Shown here: positions 298 through 35,800 of the stretch, piece by piece
Position numbering within the stretch: the first letter of the stretch is position 1
How the letters are laid out: every line of letters begins with the position of its first letter
Assembly (NCBI GenBank): GCA_963924565.1
Contig: OZ004612.1
Span: 9,548,001 to 9,612,000, forward strand
DNA length: 64,000 nt
From: Ascidiella aspersa
Lineage: Eukaryota
Direction: 5' to 3'
The notes under the pieces: generated by a model
What the model was told of the DNA's origin: nothing
What the model saw: the letters and a program-made list of their open reading frames with translations, nothing else
Database searches by the model: none
Position numbers and translations under genes: made by a program

Positions 298-3200
298 CTG
301 GCTAATGAAAGCGCGGAGGTCGCCGGTTGCTATGTGAACTTTAGCGGTGGCGCCCCTGAGCTCCTTCCGGCCTGTGTCGCTCACTGTTGCTAGGCGACTG
401 TTGATGCTGGTGAAGAACGAGTTCAAAACCTGTAATCAACATTTTAATAGGATAGTTGTTATTATGACTATAATGACCGGTTCGCGTTGAAAAAGTTTGT
501 ACCTTGAGGATAATGTTGATATGATTGTGCGCCCCACATAAGTGGGAGATTTTGACCAAACACTATTTTAAACAGAGCTTGACATTTTTTTTTTCAACAT
601 ATGTAGTTTCGATTTTCAGAATTTCTAAAGTATGACCCAAACCAAAAAAATGAAAAAAACGATACCGCTTTAATTGTACTTAAAATACAAAACACACTTA
701 CAATATGTGATACTTAAAAAGGATGAAAAACAATTATGGCACGCAAATTCAAAAAAGTTGTTTTGAGGTATGGTTGTTAAAACTATTCTGCAAGTTAACA
801 ACACACAAGCGTTTTAAAATGTTTGTACTCGATTTGACGTTAATTATCGTATGTGTATTCAGATTAGTTTGTTCTGCCCCATTATCAATAATAATGAAGA
901 CCATTTAACTTGCTATCACATTTCTATTTTCTATAAAAACGGTAACATCTACTCTCGTTTATAACTCAACAACAAAGCACCTGTCCCCTTGACTTGGCGA
1001 TGGCCCGGAGTGTGTCCAGCGAGAGGACGTTGGTGGTTCCCTCCCAGATGCTGAGCACCTGAGCATCCCGGAGGAAGGTCGGGAGTCCCGTGTCCTCCAG
1101 GTATCCGGCTCCTCCAAAGCTCTCCAGACCCTCGGATGCCATGGCAACGGCCTGGAAACGCAAAGAAGAAGAACAACAACAATGATTATCAATCAGTATT
1201 CTTTTTTTTAATTTATATTTTGCCTATACCTGCATCGCCAGTTCCTTATTCAAATAGAATGAATAAGGAACTGAAGATGCCGGTATAGGCGAAATATATA
1301 TTCCTTTCTGTTTTTTTTTTAACTTTGGGTTTTATTAGATAGAAATCGCTCTTCTGGTGTAAACGAAGTATAAACCGACGTTTCGGCGATTTCTATCTAT
1401 TGATATGTTGCCTGGTGGAGCTAATTCCATTTTGGGATTTATTGTTTAATAATGTGTCAGCGAAACAATGATCGAAGAAACCTGCTGCCAATGGTATTGG
1501 ATCAAATAAAGATACGCCTTTTTTATTTGCTAAAAGTGATGTCTTTAAATGTGAATATTGTAAACTTAATTTTACCGTTGGCCCTGAATAATATTTAGAT
1601 AAAAAATCATAAACGGGAAGCCTTTAGGATAAACCCTAAACAAGTTTCTGTTATAAAAACTATCCGTAGCTTGAAACGAGCAAATCCAAAAAAAAATAGC
1701 CAAAACACTGGCTTTTTAACATTTTGCGCTCTGTTTTTGTAGTCACAAAACCATTTTTACTTCATGGTTAAAAAGCGAACTCTACGCTATATGATATAAG
1801 ATAAAATGCAACCGCAAAATTTTGACAAAACACTTTTTGTCAATATGTGCCGTTTAGTCAACAATAACAACCGTGTGGTATATTTTATGGGTGAATGCCA
1901 GGAGGATTAAAGGTTTCGGAGTAATTTATACCTTTAGGATAAGTATGTGAATTTTCATAAAACATTAGACTAACCATGGCAAATTATTACTTAATGCTTA
2001 AAATATTGCAAAATGGTGAAATTGTAACCCTACAACGGGCACAAAAGCCCCAATGCTTAATTTTTACTCTTGCGCAAAACAAAAACACGGACAAAAACTT
2101 AAAATCAAAGCCCTGACCTGTTTAGCTGTGTAAAGTTTGCAGATGGGCGTCATAAGTCGTAAAAGGTCGTTGGTCTCATCCGACGCGCCGTCCGGCGACG
2201 CTTCACTGATTCCGAGAAGTCGAACGACCTCGAAAACCATCAGAAAAGCAGCACGACTTTCGACGTCGATGCTGTAAAAAGAAAAGAGGCATAAAACTTT
2301 GTGCGGCACGTCTATGATCAAACCTTACGTTTTACAATACCAAATCAGCAATGCGCCAATCAGATTTTATATAGTTTGTACTACTAAGTGGTGATAGTCT
2401 GCTTTTTAACCAAAACTTTCTTAAAAAATTACAAGGAAACTATATAAAAGCATAAATTCCGTGTCAAGTAAGCAAATTTTACGTTACTTTGTGAATTGCT
2501 GCAGCGATACTTTGTGCAACGGTACAAATTTAGTATCTTTAAGGGGGCTTATAGCACAGGACCGCTGGTAAAACGAAGGCGGTAATAAGAAAGAATTAAG
2601 ACTTGATCAGTCTAATTTTAACAATACTTAAAATAGGTAACACGTTGATTGTGGGAGAGGCATTCCAGCATTTCTGGCGTTAAAAAATGTACTTTTGACG
2701 GCCGCTCCAAATTCAAAAAGGTATTTAACACTGCTAAAATTTCCACACAACCTTCAGAACAGAAATCCGACGCAATAGCAAGCAAAACTACGGCCCAAAA
2801 CGAGGAACAACAGCAGCACTCAGACTCACCGCGCCAGCGTCTGCACGTGCAGCGGATGATCCTTGAGGTAGGACCCGAAAGCCTTCCGCTTCGTGGCGTA
2901 GTCCCTGGAGAGCAGGAGCAGGCGGCGCATGTTGGCGGCCGACCAGACCGAGTTGTGGATTCGCGTTAAGGTCAGCATGCCTGAGATCTGCTTGACACCG
3001 GCCGACGACTGCCCGATCTGGTAGGATAGAGCGAATACACTTTTATAGGATTTGGCTTTGGGGTTTTTGTTTTGTGAGAGGATCTTTTCGCGTTTTGGGC
3101 ATTTGACACTATGCAGGAGGTAATATTCTCCAGAGATACTGGAACCTAGTTTAAAGTATTGCACATTTACGTTAAGTAGCCTTATTTCAATCATGGGTTT

Positions 3201-6200
3201 AGGCCTTTGCGAGAGTCCTAAATATGCTTTGGGGCATAATAGTTGGAGGTTTTAACTAGACGTAGTAAGAATATCAAAGCCCATACAGTTGCATTTTGAA
3301 CGTTTCGAATATCTCTTTTTTAATATCAACGCTATACCTACTTCTGTATGGGCTCTCAATTGTTACTACGTCATAAATATATATTTCAGTATTATTTTTA
3401 TCTGGTTAAAAAACGGAAATTAAATCATGTTTAGCGACTATAGGGTCGTCAAAGTTGGCAAGCGGGTCTGCAGTACCCGGTTCCAAACATGCAAATATGT
3501 ATTCAGGGTCGACACAAAATGGTCGTCCAGTCGGCAAAACAGGTCCCAATCCCAGGTGTAAAACACTATCCCCGAACGCACACAAATAAAATCCAACTCC
3601 TAACTTACAAGGTGCGCCTTTGTGCCTTGTAGCAGCAATTCTCCGGTTGGAAGCTGCCGGGTTCCCAACTTGTCCTTAAGCCGTTGCACCTGGAGCCCGT
3701 TGAGCCCCGACGCCGGGTCACGGCAGCTGGGGTCGCGCGTCTCCAGGTAGAAGAGGGAAAGTCCCTTGGACCCCGGCGGGACGTTGCCCCTGGCAACGAA
3801 AGGTTGTCAATTGTTTAAAGACATGTTAAATCAGTGTTTCTGTTCAGACCGTTAAAAGTCTTGATTTTTTTGAAAACGTTAACATCTCGATTTTCAGTTG
3901 GGCGCCAAATCTTTGTTTTTGCGAATTTGACAATTTCCTTCGGTGGAAGTGCTTATATGTTGCCTGTGTAAGTCTATAGACGAAACGACATCAGAATTCG
4001 GCCAGCAACAAAAAAGTTATTTTTTTGCAGGTTTTGCAAAAAAATAACTTTTTGTTTCTGGCCGAATTTTGATGTTGAACGAATTTTTTTTTTCTGGCCG
4101 AATTTTGATGGTTAAGAATCTTAACCTCTAGATCGCGACCCGAGATTTGCTCACCGTTTGATTTGGTTAGGCCGCCTACTGCAGTAGTGCACATGGTTAG
4201 ATGGATTGAATTTGGTTGTGAGCAAGATTTCTCAATAATTTGAAAAAAAAAATGTCATGGTGTTTATTCACTTTAAGCTTACAAAAAGTTCAGTGGAGAG
4301 AATCGAGTCGCCAAAGTGTCACTTTTCAATATACGGCCGAGATGTTGGGTCGACCAAAAAAAGGCTGAGAAACACTACGCAAGTAAAGATAACTTAATGC
4401 AATGATTTTCAACCTTTAACACCGTTCGCACTTTTGTATTTCGCAAAATTTTCATCCGCGCGAAACAAGAATTAGTAAGTTTGCAACCTTTAATTTTCCC
4501 TATTTGTGAAATAACAATGAAAGGATTTGTGTATCAAAACCGTGAAGCATAGCTTGAACTGCAATAAACCACATGGAGACTATAATACTGTACCTGTAAC
4601 GAATAAGTGGGCCCACCAGCTTATTAGATTATTGTATTAAAAAAACAATAAACAGTTTTACGACAGTTTTTAAGTTATTGAAACAACCTAAATAAAAACT
4701 GTTATTAATTACTTATACTTTCTGTTTGTAAAAAAAATATCAAAACCCAACATGGCTTACATAACATAAGAGTAACGACGTTAAAAACAACTGCCAGTCA
4801 AACTTACTGTTCGTCGACAATCCGGGCCAGTGTTAGGGCCATGTCGGCGTCGGTAGCCGACGTGAACCACTTGTATCCGTGCAAAGCGTAGCTGCCGTCG
4901 TCTTGTAAGTACGCCAGGGTGTCGGTGCCATTCGCTGAGAAAGGCATCAGGGAAATATTAATTTTGTGATCAAGAAATACAGTAGTTGTTGGTTAGGTGC
5001 ACACAACAATGAGCACCCAGTGGATTTTAAGTTAACTTGGATTAAACTTTTATGTCGTTCCTATTTGTTCCTGGCGCGTTCTTGCTAAAATTTCGGGTTT
5101 AGGTCAAAGTTTGTTTACTCTAAATTGGTTTAAGTTCTGACATGTTACAGCTTTAGGTATGGGAAAAAAATAAATCCCTCTTGAAAAATGGCATGTTTTA
5201 TTATTATGGATTACAAGATTGTCAAAAGCTAGGGCTTTATTTGCATACTTTTTGCTGTACATACACGAAGGAGAAGGCATATTAGGCCTTGTGTCAATAT
5301 TTGTTAAAACTTGGTTTAACATGTTAATCTTTAATAATACGTGTGTAGAAAAAGTTTACACATCAGTAAATTAAACCGTGTTCAGCGGGCCACAGATAAA
5401 ATAGGCGTGGGTTAATACCACCCTGTTATAGACCGTAAAAAACGAAAGAGTTCAAAGAAAAGAAAATTCATTCCTGCTGTACAGTTCGAGCTGGTCACGT
5501 GTTAACAAGTCACCTGTCCAAACATTAGTTTCTTGGCGTCGCCCAAAAACATTTCGGTGCCAGCGGACGACCATGCTTTAAATACCCAGGGGCGGCCAAC
5601 CGTTTAGAAATAAAAAGTCAGGTTTCTTACTTGATTAACCGCAAAGAGACACATAGACAGAAAAAAAACGGTTTCTTACACACATACATTTGCTCACCTG
5701 GATTTAATTAAATTGCGAAACACTAACAGTAATGCGTCGGCTACAGTTAGGTATTTTTCTTACAGTACATGACTTTTCCAATAAATGCCATCGCGGTTTT
5801 TAAGTTTCTAAAATCTGTTGACTTGACTCCACAAAATGGGAAATTATCTGATAAGGGTTGGATCTAGCAATTTTGTTTGATGGACATGGTAAAAACGTGA
5901 TGCCGAAATAAAGTCTCGTGCGCAAATATGCAATGAAAATATGCAAGGGAAATAAACATAAAAACATTCAAGGAAGAAGCGAACAAAAGACGCAAAGAGA
6001 CGCAAGGCGCATTTATGGCGAAGATTTCCTAACGGAGCAAGACATATCGAACAGCTAATCGATTTTTTGCACGTAGGTAGTTCAAATCGCCAAACAATTT
6101 AGCACACGGAAATCGACACTGGACATTCTAAAAAGTTCAAACACAACATGAACGTAAACGCCCCCCTAAAAATGGGCAAAGAGCCGCGGTTTGGCCACAC

Positions 6201-8534
6201 CTGCAATAGCACTTGATCCAGCAAGGAAGGCATAAGAAAGACGCAAAAGTTAGTCGCCTAGCGAATCTCTAATTTTTGGTATGGCAAATATTCTGAAAAG
6301 GAGAACAACATACCTACATCGGACCCTCCAGCCTTCTCTGTCATCCATTGACCCGAAGTCCAAAACTCACGAGGATCTTTACTGGTAAGGCGTCTGAATA
6401 AGAAATCTTTCGTTTGCAAAAAAACTACTTTTTTATGCAGGCTTTCTCTAAGAGAAACTTACGGAGTTTAAGCCCGTTACCGCGACTTATTTAACCACTT
6501 AGCCAAGGTAGATGACATGTGTTGTAATTACTTCAGTCAATGATTGTTTTCAAATGACTTGAATTGACTTGACTTAAGTCTTTTAGTCAAATGACTTCGG
6601 CCAAAACGAAGTATTTTCTTATTATTTTTTTTTATGTTATATTTTTTTTCACGTTTTTTTATTTTTTAGTTCAGGAGTTGTTTATAACCGTAGGAGTTAT
6701 TCTAAAGAAAAATTCTAATAGTTCAACATTTTATTTTTATGACAAGGACATGACTTCAGGTTGACTTGCTCTATGACTTGGGACTTGTTATTTATTCTGT
6801 GTTATTTATTCAAAAAGACTTGACTTGGACTTAAGAGAAAAAACACAACTTTATTTTACAAGTGACTTTTTTCACTTGTGTATTAACCTGGACCATGTTA
6901 AAAAAATGAAGAAAAAATAAAACAGCACAGCTTCAAGATAAATAGAGAGTAATACTAAAAATAGATTTTTTTTTCATATGGATTTTAGTTACAAACAACT
7001 TACATACCGAAGAGCTGTATCCATCATTTCTTTGTTATTCGAGCATCCACTGGAAAGATCGCTCTCTATGACTTTAGCAGCGCCATCCACCATGGCAAGT
7101 GGACAAGTGTACATTCCTGAAGATGGGGCAAATATGTACAACTTGGCCATCTGAAAGATCCGACTATGTGAAACAAAAAGAAAATTTATTAGGCACCCAA
7201 TTACTTGTTGTTAGTTAGGCCATATTTTTAAACATAAAAAACGACAGTTTCGACATAAAAAGTAAAACTTGGCAAATTGTAACCTTAAAATTTTTTATGA
7301 CAAATGTAGCAGGGTTTAATTTGAAAGATTTACTAAAATTTTGCATTTTAATTTTAGATGAATTTAAATTATAACAATAAACTATTTAATAAACAATTTA
7401 AAATTTTCAAATAGAACACCTTGTAACTGTTTTTATGACAAACATGAATTTTTACATAGTTTTAATTACAATAAATCGTCACACACAAAAAGATTATTAC
7501 ATTATTTCATTGCATAAAATTTGTGTTTTTTTAATTTATTAATCCAGAAAGGATCAGTATTTGAATGTGCAAAACGAAGCCTAAAAAACTTAACAACAAA
7601 ACTAAACCACAAAAACTGCACCTGAACTCGCTGTACGTCCTGTCATATCCATGTGCAATAATACCCTCAGTGGCTGCTATCGACTTCATGTTGTCCCACT
7701 CTTCACAAGTGTCGACCCTGTCGATTCTGTGACCCCAGGCATCAAATTGGGTGAGGGTTGGGGGCTTTGTCTCACAAAGTCTGCCCATGTCATCAATGTT
7801 GCTCACAATATCATCTCCGAAACGGCAAAGGTCATTTTCGATTTCTTCAAGAAACTGAATGCACAGGGGAAAGTAGATTAATGTGACTATATTAATTACA
7901 ACAAAAGTTTTAACTTTAATTTTGAACTCCACTTTCTTAACTGATTAGTAAGTCAATCCAACACATGTAGCACATAATAGAGCACACAGCTAAACATCTA
8001 CTAAGCAATGGCAAACAATTACAATTTTTGTCACAACAGTTTATCAAACCTAGTAGTTGTAAGTACTCCAATTTAAAATAAATGCTTAAACCAGACATAC
8101 AAACCTTTTGAGGTATGTGACGTCTCAAATAGGCTATAAGGATTGCATCGCTTTTGTAGGGGTTTTGAAGCTGTGGCCTATCTTGGTTGAAAGGGCCACA
8201 TTTAGAATGCTGATAATTCTGACTGTGGCCTACATTGTTCGCACCTGGTAAAACAAATTGTTCACACCTGTTTAATATTGTTAAAATGAAGTTGCAAACG
8301 GGAATTTGACCCCAACAAACCGATCATTAATTTGAAAAAATTACAAATATTTATTTTAATGACAAAGGCCTGTTTAATTTTATTACAAATTGAAATATGT
8401 AACATATTACAGCACAAACCTGAGTTAGAAACATCTTTATTTTGTGTCTCTGCATGATCTCCTAACCTATTTTCGTGCAATGAAAAGCACCGGAATGAAA
8501 TCTGCCGAGCATTTCGAAATATCAACAGGCTCAT
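298..8534 (-). CDS. AidB-like / ACAD11-like acyl-CoA dehydrogenase, 11 exons visible, 3' end beyond the left edge of the window
   Basis: GT-AG exons joined in frame at about 8534-8420, 8244-8105, 7854-7622, 7163-7008, 6393-6314, 4934-4808, 3789-3609, 3018-2830, 2272-2118, 1151-981 and 429-298. AidB-type ACAD motifs present: [79 protein letters not shown]. The Arg/Ser-rich N-terminus ([18 protein letters not shown]) resembles a mitochondrial presequence. Confidence 0.9.
1214..1298. repeat. Near-perfect inverted repeat (about 38-bp arms, 9-nt loop) in an ACAD intron
   Basis: tatattttgcctatacctgcatcgccagttccttattc pairs with gaataaggaactgaagatgccggtataggcgaaatata, with a few mismatches. Confidence 0.85.
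3262..3369. mobile_element. Small palindromic MITE-like element, with a second copy at about 22610-22710
   Basis: Terminal inverted repeats gtagtaagaatatcaaagcccatacag ... ctgtatgggctctcaattgttactac. The same taagaatatcaaagcccatacag...gaacgtttcgaata core recurs at about 22615-22665. Confidence 0.65.
5587..6203. mobile_element. Non-autonomous hAT-like element
   Basis: Ends caggggcggccaacc ... ggtttggccacacctg form a TIR. No clear TSD. Confidence 0.55.
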
Positions 8535-9001
8535 TGCCCAAACATTAGTTTACAACCATAGGAAATATTCACTATCTAATATAACTGACAGTCATCTAAA
8601 AGCAAAACAATTCAAAAAATGAAAACACAAAGGGCAGGAATTATTGAAAGTTTAATTCATGATAAAAACATAAATTAACTTATTGAAAAGTTTATTACAT
8701 TATGAAAACATTATTAAAAGAACCAAACAAATATGTACACTCACAAAAAAGAAAGAGGAACGGATTTATTAAAGTGATTTCATTATTTAATAAACCTTTT
8801 AACCTATTTTTATTTAAAGTGCTAAATGATGCAAAGAGCAAAACAAGATAGGAAGAAGTAGAAAAATAAATACATGCATAAACAGAAGTGAACTATACAA
8901 ATATTCAGTTATCAACCAAACTTATAGTTATATATATTCATAAGACAAATTCAAAAGCAATACACAGGAGACAAAAAGCAAACTACTGTTTAAGATCAAA
9001 A

Positions 9002-9553
9002 TTAGTGATCACCACTTATTGTTGGTCCTGACAAACGAATAATGCAATTTGTAATGTCACAAGCAACTCTGGTCATTCCTACTTCCTTCAGCATTTCAAC
9101 AAGCTGCCTTCGAGTTTTACCTTGCCGCCAAACTAGTAAAGCTTGAGCGCACACCAAATTTCTTTGAGTATCAGGTTGGGTAGCTTCATTGGGAAAACGA
9201 CCTATTTTCTCAAAAATTGCAATCAAATGAGGCTTATTAACATTGGATGCAACTCGATTAATGTCAAAGTCTCCAATTTCTCCATCTAGAGGATTGATTG
9301 GTTGTTGAGGTGTTTCATCTGGAGCCTGATTCTCATCAGCTGGTAATAGTTCCGAGCTTGGAGTGTCATGTTCCGGTTGATATACCAGATTAATTTGCAC
9401 ATTTTCTGATATAGTCCCCACAGGGACTGCTTTATTTTTATTATCTGCATCACCAGTAATTTCCTCTACATTTTCTTCCCTTGTATTTTGAGAAGTGTTA
9501 GATTTTGACCAATTTTTATCTTCTGGTTTTAGTGAATCTTCGTCTTTAGACAT
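9002..9553 (-). CDS. Death-domain adaptor-like protein 2 (183 aa; disordered acidic N-terminus, C-terminal death-fold domain)
   Basis: First ATG at 9553 (the listed ORF starts earlier at a non-ATG codon), with an acceptor ttttaataag at about 9599. The C-terminal ~85 aa follow a death-domain helix pattern: DINRVASNV...CAQALLVWRQ...TRRQLVEMLKEVGMTRVA, compared with the typical DD MLxxW...TxxxLxxxLxxxGxxxVA. Fold assignment is by eye. Confidence 0.6.
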   Translation of the reverse strand: MSKDEDSLKPEDKNWSKSNTSQNTREENVEEITGDADNKNKAVPVGTISENVQINLVYQPEHDTPSSELLPADENQAPDETPQQPINPLDGEIGDFDINRVASNVNKPHLIAIFEKIGRFPNEATQPDTQRNLVCAQALLVWRQGKTRRQLVEMLKEVGMTRVACDITNCIIRLSGPTISGDH

Positions 9554-10590
9554 GCCTGGTGTACCAGTAAAAACATAGGCACAGACGATACAATATAGCT
9601 TATTAAAAAACACAATAAAGAAAATTATGAACAAAAATATTTTTTATGTGGAAACTCATTATTAAAGGTATGTATTTCAAAAACACAAGACAATAGTAGT
9701 CGTTTTTTTAAATAGGCATGATCATGATATTAACAAGAATATTTGCAAATAACAGAATTGTTATAAATGTTACATTCAATAGCAGGCCTAATGTGTTTGT
9801 CAGGGAGCTATGAAATACTTAAACTAAATTTCACTTAAAGAATTACAGGAAAAGTGTATTATTAAATATTAATTATATAATCAAACCATGTAAAATAATT
9901 ATATTGAAGAACAATATGAAATTATTAAAAGACTAAAAAACTTTGCAAAGCATATAACCCTTAGAATGTTAATTAAAATATATGTTACCTTATTGATTTT
10001 GGGAACATACTTATTCAGTTAAAACAGAAGTAACTAAAAATAAGTGCAGTGCTTTTTTATATTATAAACTACAAAAAAACATGTGATTTTTTATTGAACT
10101 CAATGGTTCTAAAACTGGGAACAGCAGACCACTGGTGTTACATTACTTATATATTATATTGGTCATATTAGATTGTCATTAAGTTTTATTGATGAATAAT
10201 TAATCCTTAAAAACTTTTGTAAGTAGTTTGTATGTGTACAGATCTAAAGTCGTTATAATTAATTATTGTACCCTGATTTTCAATTATACTTGTTTTAAAA
10301 ACAGATGTTTAAAGAAAGCAGATTGTGTATACCTACTCAAAAAGTTTGAAAACCACTGTTTGTAGAAGTAGCTAGTAATTTTCCATAAATAACACCCCTC
10401 TGGGTTGCCCAATATTAATGCACATGCCTATGATACACCACGGTTACCAGCACCCAAAATGCTTGTATATATAGATCCATACAATAAAAAGGCGACAGTT
10501 TGCAACAGGATGCTTATTAAACTAAAGTGGCAGAAAAGCATGGCTAAGAAGAGAAGAACAAAAAACAGTTGTAAGAACAATAAAAAACAG

Positions 10591-11112
10591 TCATATGCGA
10601 CTCCCGATCAATTCGTCTACCATGCCAGCTACATCGGTTGTTCTGGCAACATCTGCTGTTCTGCCGGCTTCTTTTACCAAGCTGATAAGGCATTCTACAG
10701 TTCGACGCTCATTTTCACCGACATTTGCCCTCCAGAAGTCAAGCATTTTGGCACAGGCTCGAGGACGGTCTCTTACTTCTTTGCACTGCTCTTTCTGGAC
10801 TTCTGTCAGATTGACTACCGTTAGAAGCTCCTTGTTAAAAGCTTTTGTTGCTTTTGAGGTCACCATGTTAATGTGAAGCTCATCGATTTGACGGCTACTT
10901 GGAAGTTCTGGAAAAGTGTTGCTGGAGGAATCATAATTTTGGTCATTCATAAAAGCCCCTGCCTGGTTATCCCTTCCTACAGCAGAGCCATCAACATGCC
11001 GTATTTCATTCTCTATGGTACTTGTGGTTGACATATCTCCACTTGGTTGGTTGGAAGATAACTCAGTTGAATAATCCCCAGATGGCCTTGTATTGTTATA
11101 AGGGTTGGACAT
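10591..11112 (-). CDS. Death-domain adaptor-like protein 1 (173 aa; RHIM-like motif plus C-terminal death domain)
   Basis: Single coding exon with an acceptor ttttaaatag at about 11147. The C-terminus ACAKMLDFWRANVGENERRTVECLISLVKEAGRTADVA matches DD helices 5-6. The Ser/Thr-rich N-terminus contains IRHVDGSAVGRDN. Architecture parallels the 9002-9553 gene. Confidence 0.65.
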   Translation of the reverse strand: MSNPYNNTRPSGDYSTELSSNQPSGDMSTTSTIENEIRHVDGSAVGRDNQAGAFMNDQNYDSSSNTFPELPSSRQIDELHINMVTSKATKAFNKELLTVVNLTEVQKEQCKEVRDRPRACAKMLDFWRANVGENERRTVECLISLVKEAGRTADVARTTDVAGMVDELIGSRI

Positions 11113-11599
11113 ATTTCTTATTTGTTAAAACGAAAGCATACAAATTCTATTTAAAACAAATAGATGTAGTTATAAGCACGTTAACTATTTTTTTAATCTG
11201 ATAGGCACTGATATTGTATTGCTTGATATAATTTACTTCAAGGAAGGCTTTCTGGACCACTCAGGAAAAGGTCAGATTAACAATTTTTGACATATGTACG
11301 TATTTTTCAGGGTACCGTTCTTATAAACTCGCACAAATTATTATGACGTTAGTATATAAAAAAATGAGGAACCAGATAGAAAATGTTGGATTTCACCATC
11401 ACTTTACCCATATCACGTGATTAAAACCAAGGTATGTGTTTTGAACAAAACAAAAAAAAACTAAATTTAATTGTTTAATTTTAAATAAAATATACCTATT
11501 CTGTAATCTACATTATCATGAGTTGTTTTAGTTTAGTATGAAAAATAGTAAAAATATGCCGAGTCATTATGAAATGGCACAAGTTTTCGCATGTTTACG

Positions 11600-12010
11600 T
11601 TTTTTAAACATTTGTTGTAAATTTTAGGTTTCTGGGCGGCGAGCATTAAGATTTTTTATTTTAAGACAAATATAATATCCCAAACAGTGTCCTTGAAAAA
11701 AACTCAGGATTTGTCGTGTACCGAATAGGATCATCAGCAAGGTTCAATAAATCGAGCCGGCGTGTCCGCTTTAGTTGACTTGCGGGTGCGGTAACTGCAC
11801 TGCATTCAAACGTTCACGTAGTCGCAGTTTTTTTTATATAAAATAGGAAAACGTATGCCGGCCTTTATGCACTTTCTAAGTAATAAAGCTCGCGTTGCAG
11901 GTTTCAGTTTTGGGCCGTTGGCATGTCCAGCCTTTTTGTTAAAGATCAACATGTTTACTGTTCAATTAATTGATTTAAAGTAGGGCTGCGGAGTCGGGAC
12001 TGGGCACCAG
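11600..12010. promoter_or_regulatory. Probable bidirectional promoter for the DD1-DD2-ACAD (-) and GLO1-ADAT2 (+) units
   Basis: Locally GC/CpG-richer segment between two divergent gene blocks, in otherwise CpG-poor surroundings. Positional inference only. Confidence 0.4.
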
Positions 12011-12426
12011 AAAGATCACGTAAGACTACCCAAGTCTTGGCGTGCGCTGCACTTTTTGAAACTAAAAAGTCGAAAACTGTGAATTGTAATGGTGAAATAC
12101 CAGGAATAGCAAATGGTGGAATATTTTACAACCACTCAATGTATGGATAAATTATATGACACCCTATGTGCGGATTCCTGAAATTGACCATAATTATATA
12201 ACATAAATGAGTGAAAAGCAACTGTATAGTCAGAGCTGGACTCAGGACTGGAAGTCAGACTCGGGTAATCATTTTGGCCAGAGTCAGACTTATGTTATTT
12301 TTTACCGACTCAATTTACAGCACAACAGCATTGAACAATTTTCAAAACAAATTGAGCAAACTTTTTGCAACACTACGTTGTAGGTTTAAAAATAATATAC
12401 CAGGTTATACCCACCCGAATTCAGTC

Positions 12427-14248
12427 ATGTCTGAAAATGAACCAAAAGGATTAACAAAGGAGGAGGTTGCTGCTGCAGTGCATGACCCTGATCCCTCCAC
12501 AAAGGTTAGTAATTAGTAATATTAAAGATGTCAGAATTTTGACTTAGTAGATTCATGGTCAGTCTTCTTCAACTGATCCATGTAATTGGTTAATTGTTAT
12601 TCATGTGTAGATGTGTACAACCTTTTTACACACTGCTCATTAATCTGAAATTCGGTTGCACTTGTACATTATTTAAACTTTATAGAATGCCATTGTGGTG
12701 CATAGAATTTACATATAATTTTTGGTGCAGAATATTATAGGGTTGGTAATTTTTACCTGAGAAAATCACACTTTTTGTCCTTCAAAGTAAAATTTCTGTA
12801 ATGGCCCTTTTTAACGATATTGATGGAGTAAGAGCAAAAATATTACCAGGGTTCAATACTTTTACTTGGCCTAAATTTATGTAAACTAGTTTTCTTTCCA
12901 GTTCAGAAATCATGTTCACATTTTTACCAAAAAGCAAGTTGTACATTTGGCAACTAAATTTATTACAAAATTTCACTTTTACAGGATTTTATCATGCAGC
13001 AAACAATGTTGAGAATCAAGGAACCAAAGCGTTCACTAACATTTTACTCTAAAGTTCTAGGAATGAGGTTAGAATTTGTTGAAGACAAAGTGAATATTTA
13101 CCTAAACAGAGTGGTAGGGTATTATTAAGATTGATTCTGTTTATAATTCTTTTCAAAACATTTTATAAGAGACCAGAACAAGCTGTCTCTTTTTATGCAG
13201 GCTACTTTCACAGCTGCATTTTCCAAGTATGAAATTCTCTCTGTACTTCATGGGATACGCTGATCCAAAGGATGTTCCTGTAGATGAAGATGAACGAAAA
13301 AGATGGATGTTTCAGCAACCAGCAACAGTTGAACTAACGCAGTATGTAACCATTAGCTCATGAGATTTCCGGTATATCATATCCAGTCCAACATGTCTAA
13401 GAAGAAAACTAAATTCTAAGCGGACTTTTTTATTTTAATCTATTCCACCAGTTATCTTTGTAGTAGTCCCTGGTTTCGAGAAAAAAAATTTAAACAATTT
13501 ATGTCAGTAAATCCACCAATTCTATGGAACACTGCTAAACAAAGATCAAAAACAAAACAATAGAAGACAAACTATAATCAGCAAATTATTAAGTATATTT
13601 TTACAAAATTGTATTTCATATACCTAAAGTAAAAGCCTCTAAAGTTTAGGCAGGTGTACACAGCTTTAAATTATTGGTTATTATAAGCACTGAATGCTAG
13701 ACAATAGTATTTCGGATTTTCAAGTAATACCAACAATTATTTTTACATTGAAAGTGTGTTTAAAACACAAAGTGGTTTGTGATTATGGTAAAAAAACAAG
13801 TTCACCTATTGTTTAGCAACTGGGGTACAGAAACTGATGACTCTGTTTACCACAATGGCAATTCTGCTCCAAGAGGCTTCGGTCATATTGGAATATCTGT
13901 TCCAGATGTTTATGCTGCTTGTGCAAGATTTGATGAATTTGGTGTTGAATATGTGAAACGACCAGATGGAGGTAAGAAATCCTTTTTTTTTTAAACATGT
14001 GACAGAACAATAAATTCAGATGATGTCCATGGCCGACACAAAAGTTTTGCTGCTTTGTCTGAACTGTTGTTGTGAAACTTAATTTTATTTATTATTTAAA
14101 ATAAAATATTAAAAAATAAATAATATATATACAGTATCATTTACTACTTTAAAAATGTATTTCAGGAAAAATGAAAGGCCTGGCCTTTATCAAGGACCCA
14201 GATGGTTACTGGATAGAAATTCTCAACCCAAATGCAATCGCAAAATAA
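12427..14248 (+). CDS. GLO1: Lactoylglutathione lyase (glyoxalase I), 5 exons
   Basis: Exons 12427-12504, 12985-13067, 13201-13341, 13817-13971, 14166-14248. Motifs [71 protein letters not shown]. Confidence 0.97.
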
Positions 14249-14866: not shown

Positions 14867-15421
<555 letters not shown>

Positions 15422-16668: not shown

Positions 16669-28972
<12,304 letters not shown>

Positions 28973-30769
28973 AACGCGCCCGTTTTGCCGATTGGCCAGC
29001 CTCGGAATTCTGTTTTTAAAACCTTTAGGTCGCGATATGGTAACATTGCGAGCGCAAACTGCGATACATTAGCGCCAAGCGCGTAGCAGAAATCAAACTG
29101 ATCGAACAGACATTTAAAGACGATTCTTCTTTACAGCCATTGGAAGACGTCATAATCGTCATAATGGTCGTATAAGATTTAAAATCAAATCTTCAAATAA
29201 AATGATACTTTGCTGTCTCCTATAAGGCTGCTGTCTCTTATAAAAAAGTAAACTTGGTTTGTTCGCAAATTAACAGTTTTGCAACCTCTTTAAATTAACT
29301 ATGTTTCAAACAAAAATATATTTTGCATTTTTTGCTTTGTCATTCTCTTATGTCACATATGATTTATAACAGTCTATAAATTTGCAATTGCGAGTGACCA
29401 CTTTCTTTTCAGTGTTTAATCAATTGTAACAATACTTGCTATTAAATGTACATGTCTTTATAGCCCTATTAGGCTTCATGGACTCGACGAAAGTCACTAA
29501 ACGGTCTGCTATTATGTTGTTATCCACAAGGTGTCTATCGTCAACATTATTTTGAAACTCGATAATGTGGTGTTAGAGGTGTTCAGAATAACTGACGTAC
29601 TTATGATTTTCCCGTTAGCGCCCTTCGTTTTGCCTAACATTCAGGACCACTTATTGTCTTGTGGAATTCATGTCGTCTGTCCGTTGTGCTATGTTAAAAT
29701 AGCTTTAAAATCAAATGCACAATTTCTGCCGTTTTTTTATTAATTTAAGGCGCAATGCTTTATCATAATAATCTTTATTCATAAGTATTATTATAACCAC
29801 TGTTGCAGAATTATATAAGACTGGTCTGATTATAAGGTACTGCTTAAAAGGTGTCTGATATAATCGTTGTCAATTAATTGTGCTTAAATTTCTTTAATGT
29901 CCTTTACCTGCTTATTCGGTTTATTGTTGTAATTTTTTCTTAACTGTTATGAATCCTTTGCAAAAGACCTAATTTTTATTGATAGAAGCCACAAAGTTGT
30001 GTTTCCAATGTCTTGCTATACCCCGGCTCTTTTGGTACATTTTCAACATTTCTGTTTTGTAACTTTTTTAAACATTCCATTTGTGCCAACATTCATAGAG
30101 AGAATCTTCCCAAATACAGTATTGGAGTGGTATGTCTAAGCTCCAAAGTTTTGATATTACTTTGTTTCAAAAGTTCCTTTGGATTCACTGTATGTTATTA
30201 AGCACTGCCCATTGATGCTTTTTAAAATTTTAAATAAAATTGTGCAAAGCTGATATTTTTCAAAGAACACAACATGAAAAGCCAATATTTATATTCTTTA
30301 CCAATTTTATTAATTATACATTACACGGTAAGAAACAGCTGTTGATGCACCAAAACAGATTGAACTTCCCATTTTTACAAAAATATACAAATTATTATTT
30401 TAAGAACTTTATACAGTTCGATTATAGCTGCATTAAAATAAAAAAACATTCTAGTTAAATTGTAAAAAAGAGCAATGCAAGGGGTGCTGGTAGATTAAAA
30501 AAGAATAGTACAGCAGGTGTATTCCAAAGTGGCTGGTTAATAGGAATATTTAATTTTGATTACAACTTACAAGTATAACAAAAGAACAAACAAAATATTA
30601 CAATGCAAGCTTGTATGTTGCTACTATGATTGATTAGCTAGGTTGTTGCCCGCAAGCATGTAAATCACATGGACAACATTGTTTGCTCGATCTAAAACTG
30701 TTAAAAATGAAATGGGACTGCATTGCTTTGTATGAAATATTGTCAAAAGATGTAAAAGGAGGGTTTTAA

Positions 30770-31687
30770 TTAAAGGAAATAGGGTGTGGTAGTTCTTGCG
30801 GGAATTACCCTCATATTATCAGGTACAGCTCTGAACAACTTAGGTTCTCTCTCGTCCGGGCTATTAATTGACATAATAGCGGCAATGTTGCCACAGCGAT
30901 AACAGTAATTTGGTGCAGACCACACAGTTACGAGGTTCTCATTAAACATGTACTTGTAGCCGTCGTGTACTACCTGATGGGCTCTGCAAATCAACGACAA
31001 ATTATTAAGGTGAATAAACTCCTGCGTAACTTTGGCCCCGAAAAGCCACCCTGCCCCGCGATTGCTGATGGCCCAAGTGTCCACCTCCTCCGGGTCAGAC
31101 CAGACAAGGTCGCAGAAAGGTCCTTTGTGTGGGATTTCCTGTTGTCTGTCGATGGTCCGAATTTGATCGAGGGTCTTGATATCAGGGGATAGGCCGCCAT
31201 GAACACACAACACCCTAGAATCGATGATGGCGGCGATTGTTAGCAGGTCAAACACTTTGGTGCAGTATCTCCAAGCATTTGCATTGCCGTATTTTGTTTG
31301 GCACTCGTCATAGAATCCGTAAACCTGAGTGATCTGCCTGGTTTCATGGTTTCCTCGCAAAAGTGTAATGCGATTGGGCCACTTTGCCTTCAGAGTAAGT
31401 AGGTATGTGAAGGTTTCCAAACTGTAGTAGCCGCGGTCGACAAAGTCACCCATGAAGATGTAATTTGTCTCAGGAATTTCGCCTCCAGTGCGAAAGAGTT
31501 CCAGAAGGTCGTAAAACTGCCCATGGATGTCGCCACAAACTGTGACTGGTGTCGAAACAGGTTGGACATTTGATTCTTCCAAAAGCAGATCACAAACATA
31601 ATCACATAGTTGCTTCAAATCGTGTTCGGGAAGATATTTGCATTCCCTCGCCATTTCAATCATTTTGTCGATATTTATAGAAATCAT
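30770..31687 (-). CDS. PPP6C: Serine/threonine protein phosphatase 6 catalytic subunit, intronless CDS (305 aa)
   Basis: PPP motifs GDIHGQ, GDFVDRG, RGNHE and [13 protein letters not shown]6-specific [37 protein letters not shown] and C-terminal [13 protein letters not shown]. First ATG at 31687. Confidence 0.97.
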
Positions 31688-31772
31688 TATGAAAGTGGTC
31701 AGTGAAAAACAATAAAAACTAAAGACAAGCCTAAATTTTATAAAAAACAAAGTTGTTTAAATATAGTAGAAT

Positions 31773-33826: not shown

Positions 33827-35725
33827 TTAATCGACCTCCTCGATAACTGGACCCCTTCTCGGCGCATCTTGAGATGTGTTTGGGCCAGACGCACCACCAC
33901 CAGAAGAATAAAGGTTGCTCATCACGTCTTGGCATTTCCTCTGCAGCTCTTTGAAGTGTAACACCAACTCTTCTTTGCTGGCCTGCGAGTTGCCGTCCAG
34001 CCACGTCTGCTCTTCGTCACAAGCTTGGATCACCATGTTCCGATCTTCCTCAGATATCTTGCCTCCGGTGTTGGGATCCTCGACCGCGTTCTTGACGCCG
34101 TATAAGTAGCTCTCCAGCTCGTTTTGCGCCTTGAGCCTTTCCAGCTGCTTTGCGTCGTCATCCTTGTACTTCTCGGCCTCGGCCAGCATTTGCTCGATGT
34201 CGGCCTTGGAAAGCCGGCCCTTGTTGATTGTGATCTGGTTCGACTTGCCCGTGCTCTCGTCCTGCGCCGAAACCTGCAGAATGCCGTTGGCGTCGATATC
34301 GAACGACACCTTGATCTTGGGGACGCCCCTCGGCGCCGGTGGTATGCCGGAAAGGTCGAAATTTCCCAGGATGCTGTTGTCCTTTGTCATCGCCCGCTCG
34401 CCTTCGTACACTTGTATGCGAACGGAAGATTGACGGTCCGAGTAGGTGGTAAATATCTCCGAGACTTTACAAGGAATGCGACTGTTCCTTTCCACCAGCT
34501 TTGTCATCACACCTCCCGAAGTCTCGAGCCCTAGCGAGAGGGGAGCAACATCCATCAGGAGGACGTCAGTGACCTCTGATTTCCCGGTGAGGACAGCGGC
34601 CTGGACAGCCGCGCCGTAAGCAACCGCTTCGTCTGGATTAATTGACTTGTTCAGAGTTTTGCCGTTAAAGAAGTCTTTGAGGATGTTTTGTACGCGCGGG
34701 ATTCTTGTCGATCCTCCAACCAAAACAATCTCATGTATTTCCGACTTGTCCAGTTTGGCATCTCGGAGAGCTTTCCCCACTGGATCCAGGCAGGATCTGA
34801 AAAGATCAGCGCACAGATCCTCGAATCTGGCCTTCGTGATTTTGCTGTAGAAGTCGATTCCCTCAAACAACGACTCCAACTCAATTGCTGCTTCGGCCGA
34901 GGTCGACAAAACCCTCTTCGCTCTTTCGCAGGCCGTTCGAAGTCTTCTGATTGCGCGATTGTTGCTTGAGATGTTCTTTTTGTGCTTGCGCTTAAACTCG
35001 TTCACAAAATGATCCACCATTCGGTTGTCGAAGTCTTCTCCGCCCAAATGTGTGTCTCCCGCTGTTGACAGAACTTCAAAAATTGAGCCTTCGTCAATAA
35101 GCAAGACTGAAACGTCGAAAGTGCCGCCGCCGAGATCAAAAACCAAGATCTTCTGCTCGCCGCTCATTTTTTTGTCGAGTCCGTAAGCCAAGGCCGCCGC
35201 CGTGGGTTCGTTAATGACTCGAAGAACGTTGATTCCAGCGATGGTGCCTGCGTCTTTGGTTGCCTGACGCTGGGAATCGTTGAAGTAAGCAGGAACTGTG
35301 ATCACTGCGTCTTTCACAGGTTCGCCGAGGTAAGCTTCGGAAATTTGCTTCATCTTAGAGAGGACCATGGCGCTGATTTCCTCCGGTGAAAATCTCTTTC
35401 GTTCTCCTTGGTACTCGACCTCCAGGTTAGGCTTTCCAGCATTGTTGATAACCGAAAAGGGCCAATGCTTCTTGTCGCTCTGAACTGTTTCTTCATCAAA
35501 CCGTCTTCCAATCAAGCGTTTAGCGTCGAAAATTGTGTTGTTTGGATTTCTTGCCACCTGGTCTTTAGCGCCGTCTCCAATCAGCCTTTCAGTGTCGTTG
35601 AACGCCACATAACTTGGCGTGGTCCGATTGCCTTGGTCGTTAGCTATGATTTCGACCTTTCCGTGTCGAAACACACCAACACAAGAGTAAGTCGTTCCAA
35701 GATCAATTCCGACTGCTGTTGGCAT
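33827..35725 (-). CDS. HSP70: Inducible cytosolic Hsp70, copy A, intronless
   Basis: [32 protein letters not shown] and C-terminal GPVIEEVD. The IDEGSIFEV insertion is typical of invertebrate inducible Hsp70. True ATG at 35725; the listed ORF starts at an upstream GTG. Confidence 0.98.
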
Positions 35726-35800
35726 CTTGCTATTACTTGTAGCGGCTCTAATCACTTCTTGTTGCTGTTATTGTGATTTTGATGCTGAATGGGCGTTTCG

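What the first reader, a model, noticed from the sequence alone, without database searches (positions are those of the whole stretch)
9002..11112. Tandem pair of kinase-less death-domain adaptors, one with a RHIM-like amyloid motif (IMD/RIPK1-like architecture)
Seen: two adjacent small genes with single coding exons share one layout, a ~75-95 aa disordered N-terminus followed by a C-terminal helical domain with death-domain hallmarks (CAxxLxxWR...TxxxLxxxxKExGxT). They are highly diverged from each other. DD1 contains I-R-H-V-D-G-S-A-V-G-R-D-N, which aligns without gaps to the RIPK3 RHIM I-Y-N-C-S-G-V-Q-V-G-D-N-N (I, G, VG and N conserved), though the core tetrad is SAVG rather than (V/I)Q(V/I)G. 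DD2 has beta-prone AVPVGTISENVQINLVY at a similar position. Known: a (cryptic) RHIM plus a C-terminal DD without a kinase is the architecture of arthropod IMD and of the RIPK1 C-terminal half, which signal through functional amyloids. Inference: this may be an undescribed invertebrate-chordate amyloid/death-domain immune or cell-death adaptor pair.
Basis: partly seen in the sequence, partly recalled or inferred. Interest (0 to 1): 0.8.

Follow-up and report, generated by a model that had tools for sequence, protein, structure and literature searches.

The report
Sea-squirt death-domain adaptor pair, no RHIM
Two neighbouring small genes of a sea squirt really do encode proteins with a floppy front half and a death domain at the end, and one belongs to an unstudied family found only in sea squirts, but the proposed RHIM amyloid motif is a chance resemblance that relatives do not share.

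Summary
DD1 (10591-11112, minus) and DD2 (9002-9553, minus) are complete single-exon genes, transcribed on the minus strand. Each has a disordered N-terminus and a confidently predicted C-terminal death domain. Top structural matches are TNFR1, Fas/FADD, RAIDD and RIPK1 death domains.

DD1 has homologues of the same length and layout in Ciona intestinalis (LOC100180888), Phallusia mammillata, Clavelina lepadiformis and two unnamed sources. All the named ones are 'uncharacterized'. Two of them pass Pfam's Death threshold.

The RHIM reading fails:
- No family member has the (V/I)Q(V/I/L/C)G core.
- DD1's SAVG column reads SGEG, CADG, NASI, FGEP and SGLP in the homologues.
- The segment is charged and predicted disordered.
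- Five identities in 13 is about what chance gives.
- DD2's beta-prone stretch carries V43D, T47P, V52A and L56P on another haplotype of the same species.

What the homologues do conserve are other short motifs: PxGDx(S/T)T(S/T), present twice, and NxAGAF(Y).

DD2 is a lineage-specific, very diverged tandem copy. Between two haplotypes it differs 3.7-fold more than the flanking DNA (14 nonsynonymous changes, 1 synonymous).

A lead from earlier notes of this scan, an N-terminal motif of this genome's NLR genes, showed no significant match to either protein.

Verdict: new member of a known kind (small death-domain adaptor). Modest interest.

The parts
10591..11112 (-). DD1 coding sequence: 173 aa plus stop, single exon. 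It is the local member of an ascidian-restricted family that includes Ciona LOC100180888.
   Evidence: ORF. Homologues with the same start, length and layout. RNA cover on the minus strand. Only this ORF and DD2 match the family profile in the whole 308-Mb genome.
10903..11112 (-). DD1 disordered N-terminus, residues 1-70.
   Evidence: pLDDT 43-49 and no secondary structure. Aligns to the homologues only through short motifs.
11065..11085 (-). First copy of the conserved motif PSGDxST (residues 10-16). It lies within the stretch removed by an in-frame 30-nt deletion allele (about 11050-11084).
   Evidence: Alignment. The loose end at 11049, seen in 8 RNA reads and in contigs of run X3, reads as the same coding sequence minus 10 codons, not as a spliced leader.
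11020..11046 (-). Second copy of the motif, PSGDMSTTS (residues 23-31). P23 and D26 are invariant in the family.
   Evidence: Alignments A2 and A3.
10966..11004 (-). It is not a RHIM.
   Evidence: The core column is not conserved: SAVG, SGEG, CADG, NASI, FGEP, SGLP. No canonical or loose core. pLDDT below 50. R38Q is polymorphic.
10948..10968 (-). Conserved motif NxAGAF(Y/M), residues 49-55. It is the best-conserved part of the N-terminus (A51 invariant). Its partner is unknown.
   Evidence: Alignment.
10597..10890 (-). DD1 death domain, residues 75-172, six to seven helices.
   Evidence: AlphaFold2 pLDDT 75-91 over this stretch. Foldseek top hits are TNFR1, Fas, FADD, RAIDD and RIPK1 death domains, probability 0.95-1.0, TM 0.56-0.72. 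Pfam Death over residues 104-152, E=0.039. Profile search of PDB sequences: top hits are FADD and Fas death domains, E about 0.06.
9002..9553 (-). DD2 coding sequence: 183 aa plus stop, counted from the ATG at 9553 (the open frame reaches back to a TTG at 9634). It is a lineage-specific diverged tandem copy of DD1.
   Evidence: ORF. 23-29% identity to DD1. Matches the family profile at E=6e-29 over the death domain. No homologue of its own found. RNA cover.
9380..9430 (-). DD2 'beta-prone' stretch AVPVGTISENVQINLVY (residues 42-58). It is a variable linker, not a conserved motif.
   Evidence: Another haplotype carries K41E, V43D, T47P, V52A and L56P. The stretch aligns to the variable linker ahead of the second PxGD motif in the homologues. 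pLDDT below 50.
9029..9286 (-). DD2 death domain, residues 90-175. It has five helices; the helix-3 position is a loop.
   Evidence: AlphaFold2 pLDDT 88-96 outside the 69 block at the helix-3 loop. Foldseek top hits are RAIDD, TRADD and FADD death domains and vFLIP DEDs. Nine of the 14 nonsynonymous differences between the two haplotypes fall here.
9554..10590 (-). Transcribed spacer between DD1 and DD2: DD1 3'UTR and/or read-through.
   Evidence: RNA contig of run X2 is continuous over 9507-10890. X4 reads cover it except for 9683-9873. It holds 8 SNPs in 1037 nt and serves as the neutral yardstick.
8418..8534 (-). First coding exon of the next gene downstream, an AidB-like acyl-CoA dehydrogenase. 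One RNA contig joins it to the DD2 coding sequence.
   Evidence: X2 contig 9 runs 9319 to 8418, then splices to 8242-8105 and 7854-7622 with GT..AG ends on the minus strand. AidB_N and Acyl-CoA_dh_1 match the exons at 7534-7932 and 2829-3194.

Best explanation
DD1 is this sea squirt's copy of a small, ascidian-restricted death-domain adaptor family of 164-204 aa. Ciona LOC100180888 is the annotated member.

Each protein is a single coding exon. It has an intrinsically disordered N-terminus carrying conserved short linear motifs: PxGDx(S/T)T(S/T), present twice, then NxAGAF(Y). A six-helix death domain of the FADD/Fas/TNFR1/RIPK1 type follows.

The likely mechanism is inferred from how death-domain adaptors work in general. 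The death domain joins a homotypic death-domain assembly with a receptor or adaptor. Ciona has three TNF receptors and a FADD-like protein. The N-terminal motifs would then serve as docking or modification sites for downstream factors.

DD2 is a lineage-specific tandem duplicate. It kept the fold but lost the first PxGD motif, the NxAGAF motif and helix 3. It is unusually polymorphic at the protein level, so it is more likely a modulator or decoy than a second copy of the same adaptor.

Neither protein carries a RHIM, and nothing indicates amyloid signalling.

Shown: the genes, their transcription, the fold, the family, the motif conservation and the polymorphism. Inferred: the adaptor role, the partners and the role of DD2.
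For: Genes and family:
- Profile search found five homologues with the same architecture, E 5.6e-8 to 5.8e-5.
- Three are named: Phallusia mammillata CAB3262618.1, Ciona intestinalis XP_002132170 and Clavelina lepadiformis XP_076816794.1. All three are 'uncharacterized'.
- The start Met, length and motifs are conserved.
- The homologue in a metagenome contig is also a single exon.

Fold:
- Pfam Death matches 6 of 7 members. P0001 scores 23.5 bits and P0002 23.7 bits against a cut-off of 22.6.
- AlphaFold2 gives DD1 residues 75-172 pLDDT 75-91, and the DD2 domain about 90 except at its helix-3 loop.
- Foldseek's top ranks are death domains.
- The PDB profile search puts FADD and Fas death domains first.

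Expression:
- Stranded RNA reads and spliced RNA contigs from two studies cover both ORFs on the minus strand.
- An in-frame 30-nt indel allele keeps the DD1 frame.

Copy number: only DD1 and DD2 match the family profile in the genome.

DD2 polymorphism:
- One other haplotype differs at 15 of 552 coding sites, against 12 of 1621 in flanking non-coding DNA (Fisher p=0.0011).
- 14 of the 15 changes are nonsynonymous.

Ciona's extrinsic-pathway components are listed in PMC10923776.
Against: - No functional data exist for any member.
- The death-domain matches are individually weak: Foldseek E is 0.08 or worse, the PDB profile E is about 0.06, and DD1's own Pfam score is below threshold.
- Partners are not identified.
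- The N-terminal motifs match no motif class that I could test.
- Polymorphism shows no purifying selection on either gene. All 4 SNPs seen in DD1 are nonsynonymous, though that number is too small to mean much.
- Translation is not shown. The RNA could be a read-through precursor shared with the downstream acyl-CoA dehydrogenase gene.
- The polymorphism argument rests on essentially two haplotypes plus partial data from two more individuals.
Confidence: 0.7

Rival explanations
1. DD1, and perhaps DD2, is an IMD/RIPK1-like adaptor whose N-terminal RHIM or cryptic RHIM forms a signalling amyloid.
For: - The layout is a disordered N-terminus plus a C-terminal death domain without a kinase, as in IMD.
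- RIPK1 death domains are among the Foldseek hits.
- DD2 contains VPVG, which fits the loose VxxG core, and VQIN, which is one residue short of the canonical tetrad.
Against: - No canonical tetrad occurs in any of the 7 family members, and DD1 has no [VI]xxG at all in its N-terminus.
- The tetrad column is not conserved. Its fourth-position Gly, the one residue reported as fully conserved in RHIMs (PMC9387487), is P, P or I in three homologues.
- The segment has 4 charged residues in 13, mean hydropathy -0.74 and pLDDT below 50.
- DD2's stretch carries V43D, T47P, V52A and L56P on another haplotype.
- The resemblance is at chance level.
- Tunicates were reported to lack RHIMs (PMC4262963).
Confidence: 0.03
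2. DD2 is a decaying duplicate, a young pseudogene or a neutrally drifting ORF. It is transcribed only because it sits between DD1 and the acyl-CoA dehydrogenase gene.
For: - 14 of its 15 SNPs are nonsynonymous.
- It has no homologue of its own and no Pfam hit.
- It lost helix 3 and two of the family's N-terminal motifs.
Against: - The frame is open in every haplotype seen.
- AlphaFold2 gives pLDDT of about 90 or more over most of the domain.
- Nonsynonymous divergence is 14 of 428 sites. That is about 4.5 times the rate at non-coding plus synonymous sites (p=0.0002), whereas a pseudogene should only match that rate.
- None of the changes hits the family's invariant columns.
Confidence: 0.2
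3. The N-termini carry a non-RHIM templating motif shared with the N-terminal exon of this genome's expanded NLR genes. DD1 or DD2 would then be the missing partner of those NLRs.
For: - The genome has more than 95 NACHT exons.
- 53 copies of an NLR N-terminal exon encode a Gly-spaced motif.
- DD2 residues 76-97 share QPIN..L...IGD with it.
- The DD1 family conserves a Gly/Asn/Ala-rich segment.
Against: - An HMM of 38 NLR exons scores DD2 at 3.2 bits, and 54 of 2000 shuffles reach that score. DD1 scores 0.8 bits, reached by 151 of 2000 shuffles. Neither is significant for two tests.
- The matching DD2 segment is the pre-helix-1 part of the death domain, which aligns to the homologues.
- The N-terminal profile of the DD1 family hits nothing else in the genome.
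Confidence: 0.04
4. The ORFs are untranslated upstream ORFs in a long leader of the AidB-like acyl-CoA dehydrogenase mRNA.
For: One RNA contig runs from inside the DD2 coding sequence into the spliced dehydrogenase exons. RNA cover is nearly continuous from 11401 down to 7582.
Against: - DD1 is a conserved protein family in at least three named ascidian genera.
- In another ascidian-type contig the homologue has no dehydrogenase within 10 kb.
- A contig that spans two genes does not show a single molecule.
- Poly(A)-signal-like AATAAA sites and polypyrimidine-AG sites lie between the ORFs.
Confidence: 0.03

Closest known systems
Ciona intestinalis LOC100180888 (XP_002132170), with Phallusia mammillata CAB3262618.1 and Clavelina lepadiformis XP_076816794.1
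   Same: Same family as DD1: 164-204 aa, the same start, two PxGDxSTT motifs, NxAGAF(Y), and a C-terminal death domain. Identity to DD1 is 28-38%.
   Different: All are annotated 'uncharacterized' and no paper mentions them. None of those found is a DD2-type copy.
FADD, Fas, TNFR1, RAIDD and RIPK1 death domains
   Same: Six-helix death domain. These are the best sequence-profile and structure matches. The (L)L..W helix-4 signature is shared.
   Different: There is no DED, CARD, kinase or receptor part. Identity is only 13-19% for DD1 (up to 21% for DD2). No one subfamily stands out.
Arthropod IMD
   Same: A kinase-less protein with a disordered N-terminus carrying short motifs and a C-terminal death domain.
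   Different: No cryptic RHIM and no conserved Asp-Ala cleavage/IAP-binding site in the alignment. Orthology was not shown. The features of IMD are taken from PMC4262963, PMC9387487 and PMC13506858, and partly from my own knowledge.
EDARADD-type small death-domain adaptors (from my own knowledge, not tested here)
   Same: Roughly 200 aa, with a disordered N-terminus carrying a docking motif and a C-terminal death domain.
   Different: No PxQx(T/S) TRAF-type motif is conserved in the DD1 family (by eye). No sequence comparison could be run.

Membership tests
Death domain (Pfam PF00531, death-fold superfamily) | Sequence match to the Death profile at or above the curated cut-off (22.6 bits). | tested here: met
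   Met at family level. P0001 scores 23.5 bits and P0002 23.7 bits, and 6 of 7 members hit Death as their only or one of their top matches. DD1 alone scores 14.5 bits and DD2 has no hit.
Death domain (Pfam PF00531, death-fold superfamily) | Compact bundle of six antiparallel helices. | tested here: met
   DD1 has helices at 78-85, 90-99, 104-111, 116-129, 139-149 and 153-170, pLDDT 75-91. DD2 has five helices with a loop at helix 3. Foldseek's top hits are death domains, probability 0.95-1.0, TM up to 0.72.
Death domain (Pfam PF00531, death-fold superfamily) | Homotypic oligomerisation with other death domains. | not testable with these tools
   No multimer prediction or binding assay was available.
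RHIM | Core tetrad (V/I)-Q-(V/I/L/C)-G (PMC13506858). | tested here: not met
   A regex over all 7 family members found none. DD1 has SAVG and DD2 has VQIN.
RHIM | An 18-20 residue hydrophobic, amyloidogenic, beta-forming segment. | tested here: not met
   The DD1 segment has 4 charged residues in 13 and mean hydropathy -0.74, with pLDDT below 50 and no strand. The DD2 segment is more hydrophobic (+0.74), but it carries Pro and Asp substitutions on another haplotype. These are crude measures only. No amyloid predictor was run.
RHIM | Conservation of the motif in orthologues. | tested here: not met
   The tetrad column reads SAVG, SGEG, CADG, NASI, FGEP and SGLP. The fourth-position Gly is lost in three of the five homologues.
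RHIM | Forms amyloid fibrils and seeds its partners. | not testable with these tools
   Needs thioflavin-T, electron microscopy or seeding assays.
Cryptic RHIM (insect IMD pathway) | Loose core VxxG or IxxG within a hydrophobic, beta-prone stretch (PMC9387487, PMC13506858). | tested here: not met
   DD1 has no [VI]xxG in its N-terminus. DD2 has VPVG, but V43 is polymorphic to Asp and the pattern is too loose to be meaningful. Hits in the homologues lie at unrelated positions.
IMD (arthropod adaptor) | Kinase-less protein with a disordered N-terminus and a C-terminal death domain. | tested here: met
   Architecture. This feature is not specific to IMD.
IMD (arthropod adaptor) | Caspase cleavage after Asp that exposes an Ala-x-Pro-type IAP-binding N-terminus (my own knowledge of IMD). 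| tested here: not met
   No conserved Asp-Ala-x-Pro in alignment A2. Only P0001 has Asp-Ala at the second PxGD motif. Checked by eye only.
IMD (arthropod adaptor) | Sequence orthology to IMD or to the RIPK1 death domain. | tested here: inconclusive
   RIPK1 death domains are among the Foldseek hits but rank no better than FADD, Fas or TNFR1. No IMD sequence was at hand to compare.

The most novel reading that the evidence does not exclude
The DD1 family would be a tunicate-specific signalling adaptor whose conserved N-terminal motifs (PxGDxSTT twice, NxAGAF(Y)) define a new docking or processing module feeding a death-domain pathway. It would be a functional analogue of IMD or EDARADD that arose in ascidians. 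DD2 would be a hypervariable death-domain decoy kept diverse by balancing or diversifying selection, for example under pressure from pathogen effectors that target death domains, or in self/non-self recognition.
Probability: 0.15. Interest if true: 0.6.

Novelty: new member of a known kind. Interest (0 to 1): 0.3.

Why it matters
Tunicates are the closest invertebrate relatives of vertebrates, yet their cell-death and innate-immune wiring is poorly mapped. Only a FADD-like protein, three TNF receptors and a caspase-8/10 have been discussed for Ciona (PMC10923776).

This work adds a conserved, ascidian-restricted, unstudied small death-domain adaptor with defined candidate docking motifs, which can be tested directly in Ciona. 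It also removes a false lead: a RHIM here would have overturned the published view that tunicates lack RHIMs.

The very high amino-acid polymorphism of DD2 is the one feature worth following up with population data.

Tried and rejected
Searches that found nothing:
- Word-based homologue searches with DD1 and DD2 alone.
- PDB sequence searches with the single proteins, which gave only chance hits.
- Own-genome searches with each protein, which found no further copies.

Spliced-leader idea, rejected. The loose end at 11049 looked like a trans-spliced leader, but no AG precedes it. The loose sequence reads as the same coding sequence minus 10 codons. It also occurs in contigs of run X3, which span introns and look like DNA. 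It is therefore an in-frame indel allele.

NLR-partner idea, prompted by earlier notes of this scan, not supported. I located the NLR N-terminal exon motif, collected 38 distinct copies and built an HMM. The matches to DD2 and DD1 were not significant.

I dropped that step and calibrated the HMM score on shuffles read from stored files instead.

Synteny:
- The one metagenome contig with a homologue shows no acyl-CoA dehydrogenase within 10 kb. It has only a weak second family-like ORF.

Tools not available:
- The VIA-align libraries were not on the machine.
For the Ciona homologue it gave only leads below 0.9.

Handling of spliced genes.
Full report
**What is there**

The region holds two minus-strand ORFs. 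DD1 is at 10591..11112 (173 aa from an ATG). DD2 is at 9002..9634 as an open frame, with the first ATG at 9553 giving 183 aa. The window is AT-rich animal DNA (GC 0.30-0.50). It lies at C6:9548001-9612000 of a 308-Mb assembly. The two proteins resemble each other only over the C-terminal ~85 residues (28% identity, E=6e-4).

**Are they genes?**

Word-based searches with either protein alone found nothing. A full HMMER scan of 1.84 billion representatives used a profile of the two C-terminal domains. It returned five proteins of 164-204 aa whose match lies at their C-terminus (E 5.6e-8 to 5.8e-5), plus one repeat protein that I take as spurious.

Exact look-up names three of them:
- Phallusia mammillata CAB3262618.1
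- Ciona intestinalis XP_002132170 (LOC100180888)
- Clavelina lepadiformis XP_076816794.1

All three are 'uncharacterized protein'. Two more come from unnamed Logan or JGI assemblies. So the animal is an ascidian and DD1 belongs to a family found so far only in ascidians.

The alignment shows a conserved initiator Met, similar lengths and 28-38% identity to DD1. The ATG at 11112 is therefore the true start, and the gene is a single coding exon. The homologue on a metagenome contig is also a single exon. In the whole genome only DD1 and DD2 match the family profile. All five homologues are DD1-like. DD2 has no homologue of its own and is best read as a lineage-specific, strongly diverged tandem copy.

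**Transcription**

I laid one RNA-seq run of raw reads (X4) and three sets of Logan contigs on 7200-12900, which is 5701 letters and within the operators' limit.
- X4 reads lie only in the orientation expected for minus-strand RNA. They cover 7582-11401 except for one bin (9683-9873).
- Run X2 behaves as RNA. It has no cover over introns, and it has GT..AG joints at 7854/8105 and 8242/8418. Its contigs are continuous from 8418 to 10980.
- One X2 contig runs from inside the DD2 coding sequence into the spliced exons of the next gene.

That next gene is an AidB-like acyl-CoA dehydrogenase. AidB_N matches 7534-7932 and Acyl-CoA_dh_1 matches 2829-3194, searched exon by exon. Its ATG is at 8534.

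Both ORFs are therefore transcribed, in two independent studies, and the three genes are tightly packed or co-transcribed. Whether this is a trans-spliced operon, as another first-stage note (s1-793931) proposes, cannot be settled here. The only candidate leader, a 23-nt loose end at 11049, is not one. No AG precedes it, and it reads as the same coding sequence with 10 codons missing. It also occurs in the X3 contigs, which span introns. It is an in-frame 30-nt indel allele that removes the first PSGD motif copy.

**The fold**

- DD1 alone gives a sub-threshold Pfam Death hit (14.5 bits, E=0.039), and DD2 gives none.
- Across the family, 6 of 7 members hit Death. P0001 (23.5 bits) and P0002 (23.7 bits) pass the curated cut-off of 22.6.
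- A profile search of PDB sequences puts FADD and Fas death domains in 11 of its 15 matches (best E about 0.06).
- The AlphaFold2 model of DD1, made with the 7-sequence alignment, has residues 75-172 at pLDDT 75-91 as a six-to-seven-helix bundle. Residues 1-70 are below 50 with no secondary structure.
- The DD2 model has residues about 90-175 at pLDDT around 90, apart from a block at 69. It has five helices and a loop where helix 3 should be.
- Foldseek against the PDB ranks TNFR1, Fas, FADD, RAIDD and RIPK1 death domains first for DD1 (probability 0.95-1.0, TM 0.56-0.72). For DD2 it ranks RAIDD, TRADD and FADD death domains and vFLIP DEDs first.

E-values are weak, as usual for a ~90-residue helical domain, but the ranking is uniform. 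The VIA-align libraries were not available. I take the death-domain assignment as established.

**The RHIM claim**

The literature defines a RHIM as an 18-20 residue amyloidogenic segment with the core (V/I)-Q-(V/I/L/C)-G. The insect cryptic RHIM has the looser core VxxG or IxxG, in which only the Gly is invariant, within a hydrophobic beta-prone stretch (PMC13506858, PMC9387487).
- None of the seven family members has the canonical core. DD1 has no [VI]xxG anywhere in its N-terminus.
- Anchored on the conserved AGAF that follows it, DD1's SAVG column reads SGEG, CADG, NASI, FGEP and SGLP in the homologues. The first three positions are not hydrophobic or Gln as required, and the Gly is lost in three homologues.
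- The DD1 segment has 4 charged residues in 13 and mean hydropathy -0.74. It is modelled as disordered.
- Five identities in an ungapped 13-mer are expected 0.04-0.09 times per template in a 75-residue N-terminus. Over the ten or so published RHIMs one could align to, that is of order one.
- DD2's stretch AVPVGTISENVQINLVY is more hydrophobic and contains VPVG and VQIN. On the haplotype carried by runs X2 and X3 it bears K41E, V43D, T47P, V52A and L56P. A functional beta-strand motif would not tolerate this.
- In the family alignment the DD2 stretch falls in the variable linker before the second PxGD motif.
- Kajava et al. [quoted passage not shown]

**What is conserved instead**

The N-terminus of the DD1 family carries these motifs:
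- P-(S/E/Q/D)-G-D-x-(S/T)-T-(S/T), present twice. P23 and D26 of the second copy are invariant.
- N-x-A-(G/E/Q)-(A/P)-(F/I)-(Y), with A51 invariant.
- A G-P-x-V-E..P..R..D..H-I-N lead-in to helix 1.

These look like short linear motifs in a disordered region. A profile of this N-terminus hits nothing else in the genome. I could not assign them to a known motif class with the tools at hand. Resemblances to Ser/Thr-rich degrons, or to IAP-binding tetrapeptides for AGAF, are recollections and were not tested.

**The NLR lead**

Earlier notes of this scan (s1-790889, s1-801712) describe a Gly-spaced N-terminal motif on about 60 NLR genes of this genome, with no partner found.
- I confirmed a large NACHT expansion: at least 95 exons.
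- I found the motif exon upstream of NACHT exons.
- I collected 53 genomic matches and 38 distinct sequences and built an HMM.
- DD2 scores 3.2 bits through a QPIN..L...IGD match at residues 76-97, and 54 of 2000 composition-preserving shuffles do as well. DD1 scores 0.8 bits, matched by 151 of 2000 shuffles.

This is not significant, so no link is shown.

**Polymorphism**

The X2 haplotype is fully enumerated against the reference between 8418 and 10890, because tables 3 and 8 agree.

| Stretch | Differences |
|---|---|
| 8418-9001 | 4 in 584 nt |
| DD2 coding sequence | 15 in 552 nt |
| DD1-DD2 spacer | 8 in 1037 nt |
| DD1 coding sequence, covered part | 3 in 390 nt |

- Of the 15 DD2 differences, 14 are nonsynonymous. 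All 4 seen in DD1 are nonsynonymous.
- DD2 coding sequence against flanking non-coding DNA gives odds ratio 3.7, Fisher p=0.0011.
- Nonsynonymous sites against non-coding plus synonymous sites give p=0.0002.
- The N:S ratio alone is not significant (p=0.13).
- The reference individual is itself heterozygous at four nonsynonymous DD2 sites, and X4 shows further combinations.
- None of the changes touches the family's invariant columns.

This pattern is not what a plain pseudogene gives, since that should only reach the neutral rate. It suggests diversifying or balancing selection on DD2. It rests on very few haplotypes and needs population data.

**Synteny**

On the one metagenome contig with a homologue (L062), there is no acyl-CoA dehydrogenase within 10 kb. 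A weak family-like ORF lies 5.4 kb downstream on the same strand (13133-13414, E=0.025, with PDGDVTTS and PQRDLQST motifs). It could be a second, degenerate or intron-split copy.

**Verdict**

The tandem pair of small death-domain proteins is real and expressed. DD1 is a new, unstudied but annotated ('uncharacterized') ascidian family of death-domain adaptors with conserved N-terminal linear motifs. DD2 is its fast-evolving local duplicate.

The RHIM/amyloid, IMD/RIPK1-like interpretation is not supported. The most likely mechanism is inferred, not shown: ordinary homotypic death-domain assembly with a receptor or a FADD-like partner, with the N-terminal motifs serving as docking or regulatory sites. 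Ciona has the extrinsic-pathway parts (PMC10923776).

Novelty: new member of a known kind. Interest: modest.

Noticed in passing
window 9002-9553: DD2 is hyper-polymorphic. One other haplotype differs at 15 of 552 coding sites (14 nonsynonymous), against about 0.75% in flanking introns and spacers. The reference individual is itself heterozygous at 9061, 9088, 9095 and 9111.
   Followed up: partly
window 11050-11084: An in-frame 30-nt indel allele of DD1 removes the first PSGD motif copy. It is seen in RNA reads of X4 and in contigs of X3. At first sight it mimics a spliced leader.
   Followed up: yes
window 9265/9953: Five X4 reads (two start points) join 9265 to 9953, with 5 extra letters (GTGCG) and non-canonical ends (AA..CA). 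This may be a template-switch artefact or a structural variant. Unexplained.
   Followed up: no
window 11975-12165: Contig depth jumps to 331 in X1 and 939 in X3, against about 40-100 nearby. A repeated element probably lies between DD1 and the plus-strand gene that starts near 12211.
   Followed up: no
window 2829-8534 (minus): AidB-like acyl-CoA dehydrogenase gene directly downstream of DD2. Its first exon looks like a mitochondrial presequence (ATG at 8534). One RNA contig joins it to DD2, which fits the operon idea of note s1-793931 but does not prove it.
   Followed up: partly
window 33827-35755 (minus) and 47655-49550 (plus): Two intronless Hsp70 genes in divergent orientation, about 12 kb apart and very similar to each other.
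   Followed up: no
window 27878-29046: GC-rich stretch (0.44-0.47) with long overlapping ORFs on both strands (205, 336 and 132 aa). The one ORF scanned (336 aa) has no Pfam match. It could be a repeat or a CpG-island-like region.
   Followed up: no
window 14873-15421 (+) and 30770-31750 (-): Single-exon genes for a CDA/ADAT2-type zinc deaminase and a PP2A/PP4-type serine/threonine phosphatase (Metallophos, E=5e-44).
   Followed up: partly
G000:C7:2.4-6.7 Mb and other clusters; loci L014, L019, L025-L061: At least 95 NACHT exons in the genome. 53 copies of an NLR N-terminal exon encode ..ENAPQLPPANNQPINVLPVNIGDVYGHQGPIQNLHGDVHIYG.., a Gly-spaced motif with diverged sub-types. This agrees with earlier notes of the scan.
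   Followed up: partly
L004 3667-4170 and 5956-6459 (G000:C3:22958.7-22961.5 kb): Two identical tandem copies of a 167-aa ORF whose C-terminus matches Pfam Death (24.2 bits) and whose middle is Ser-rich. This is another small death-domain protein, unrelated in sequence to DD1 and DD2.
   Followed up: no
L062 13133-13414: In another ascidian-type contig, a weak second family-like ORF lies 5.4 kb downstream of the DD1 homologue. It ends at a possible GT donor just where the death domain should begin.
   Followed up: partly
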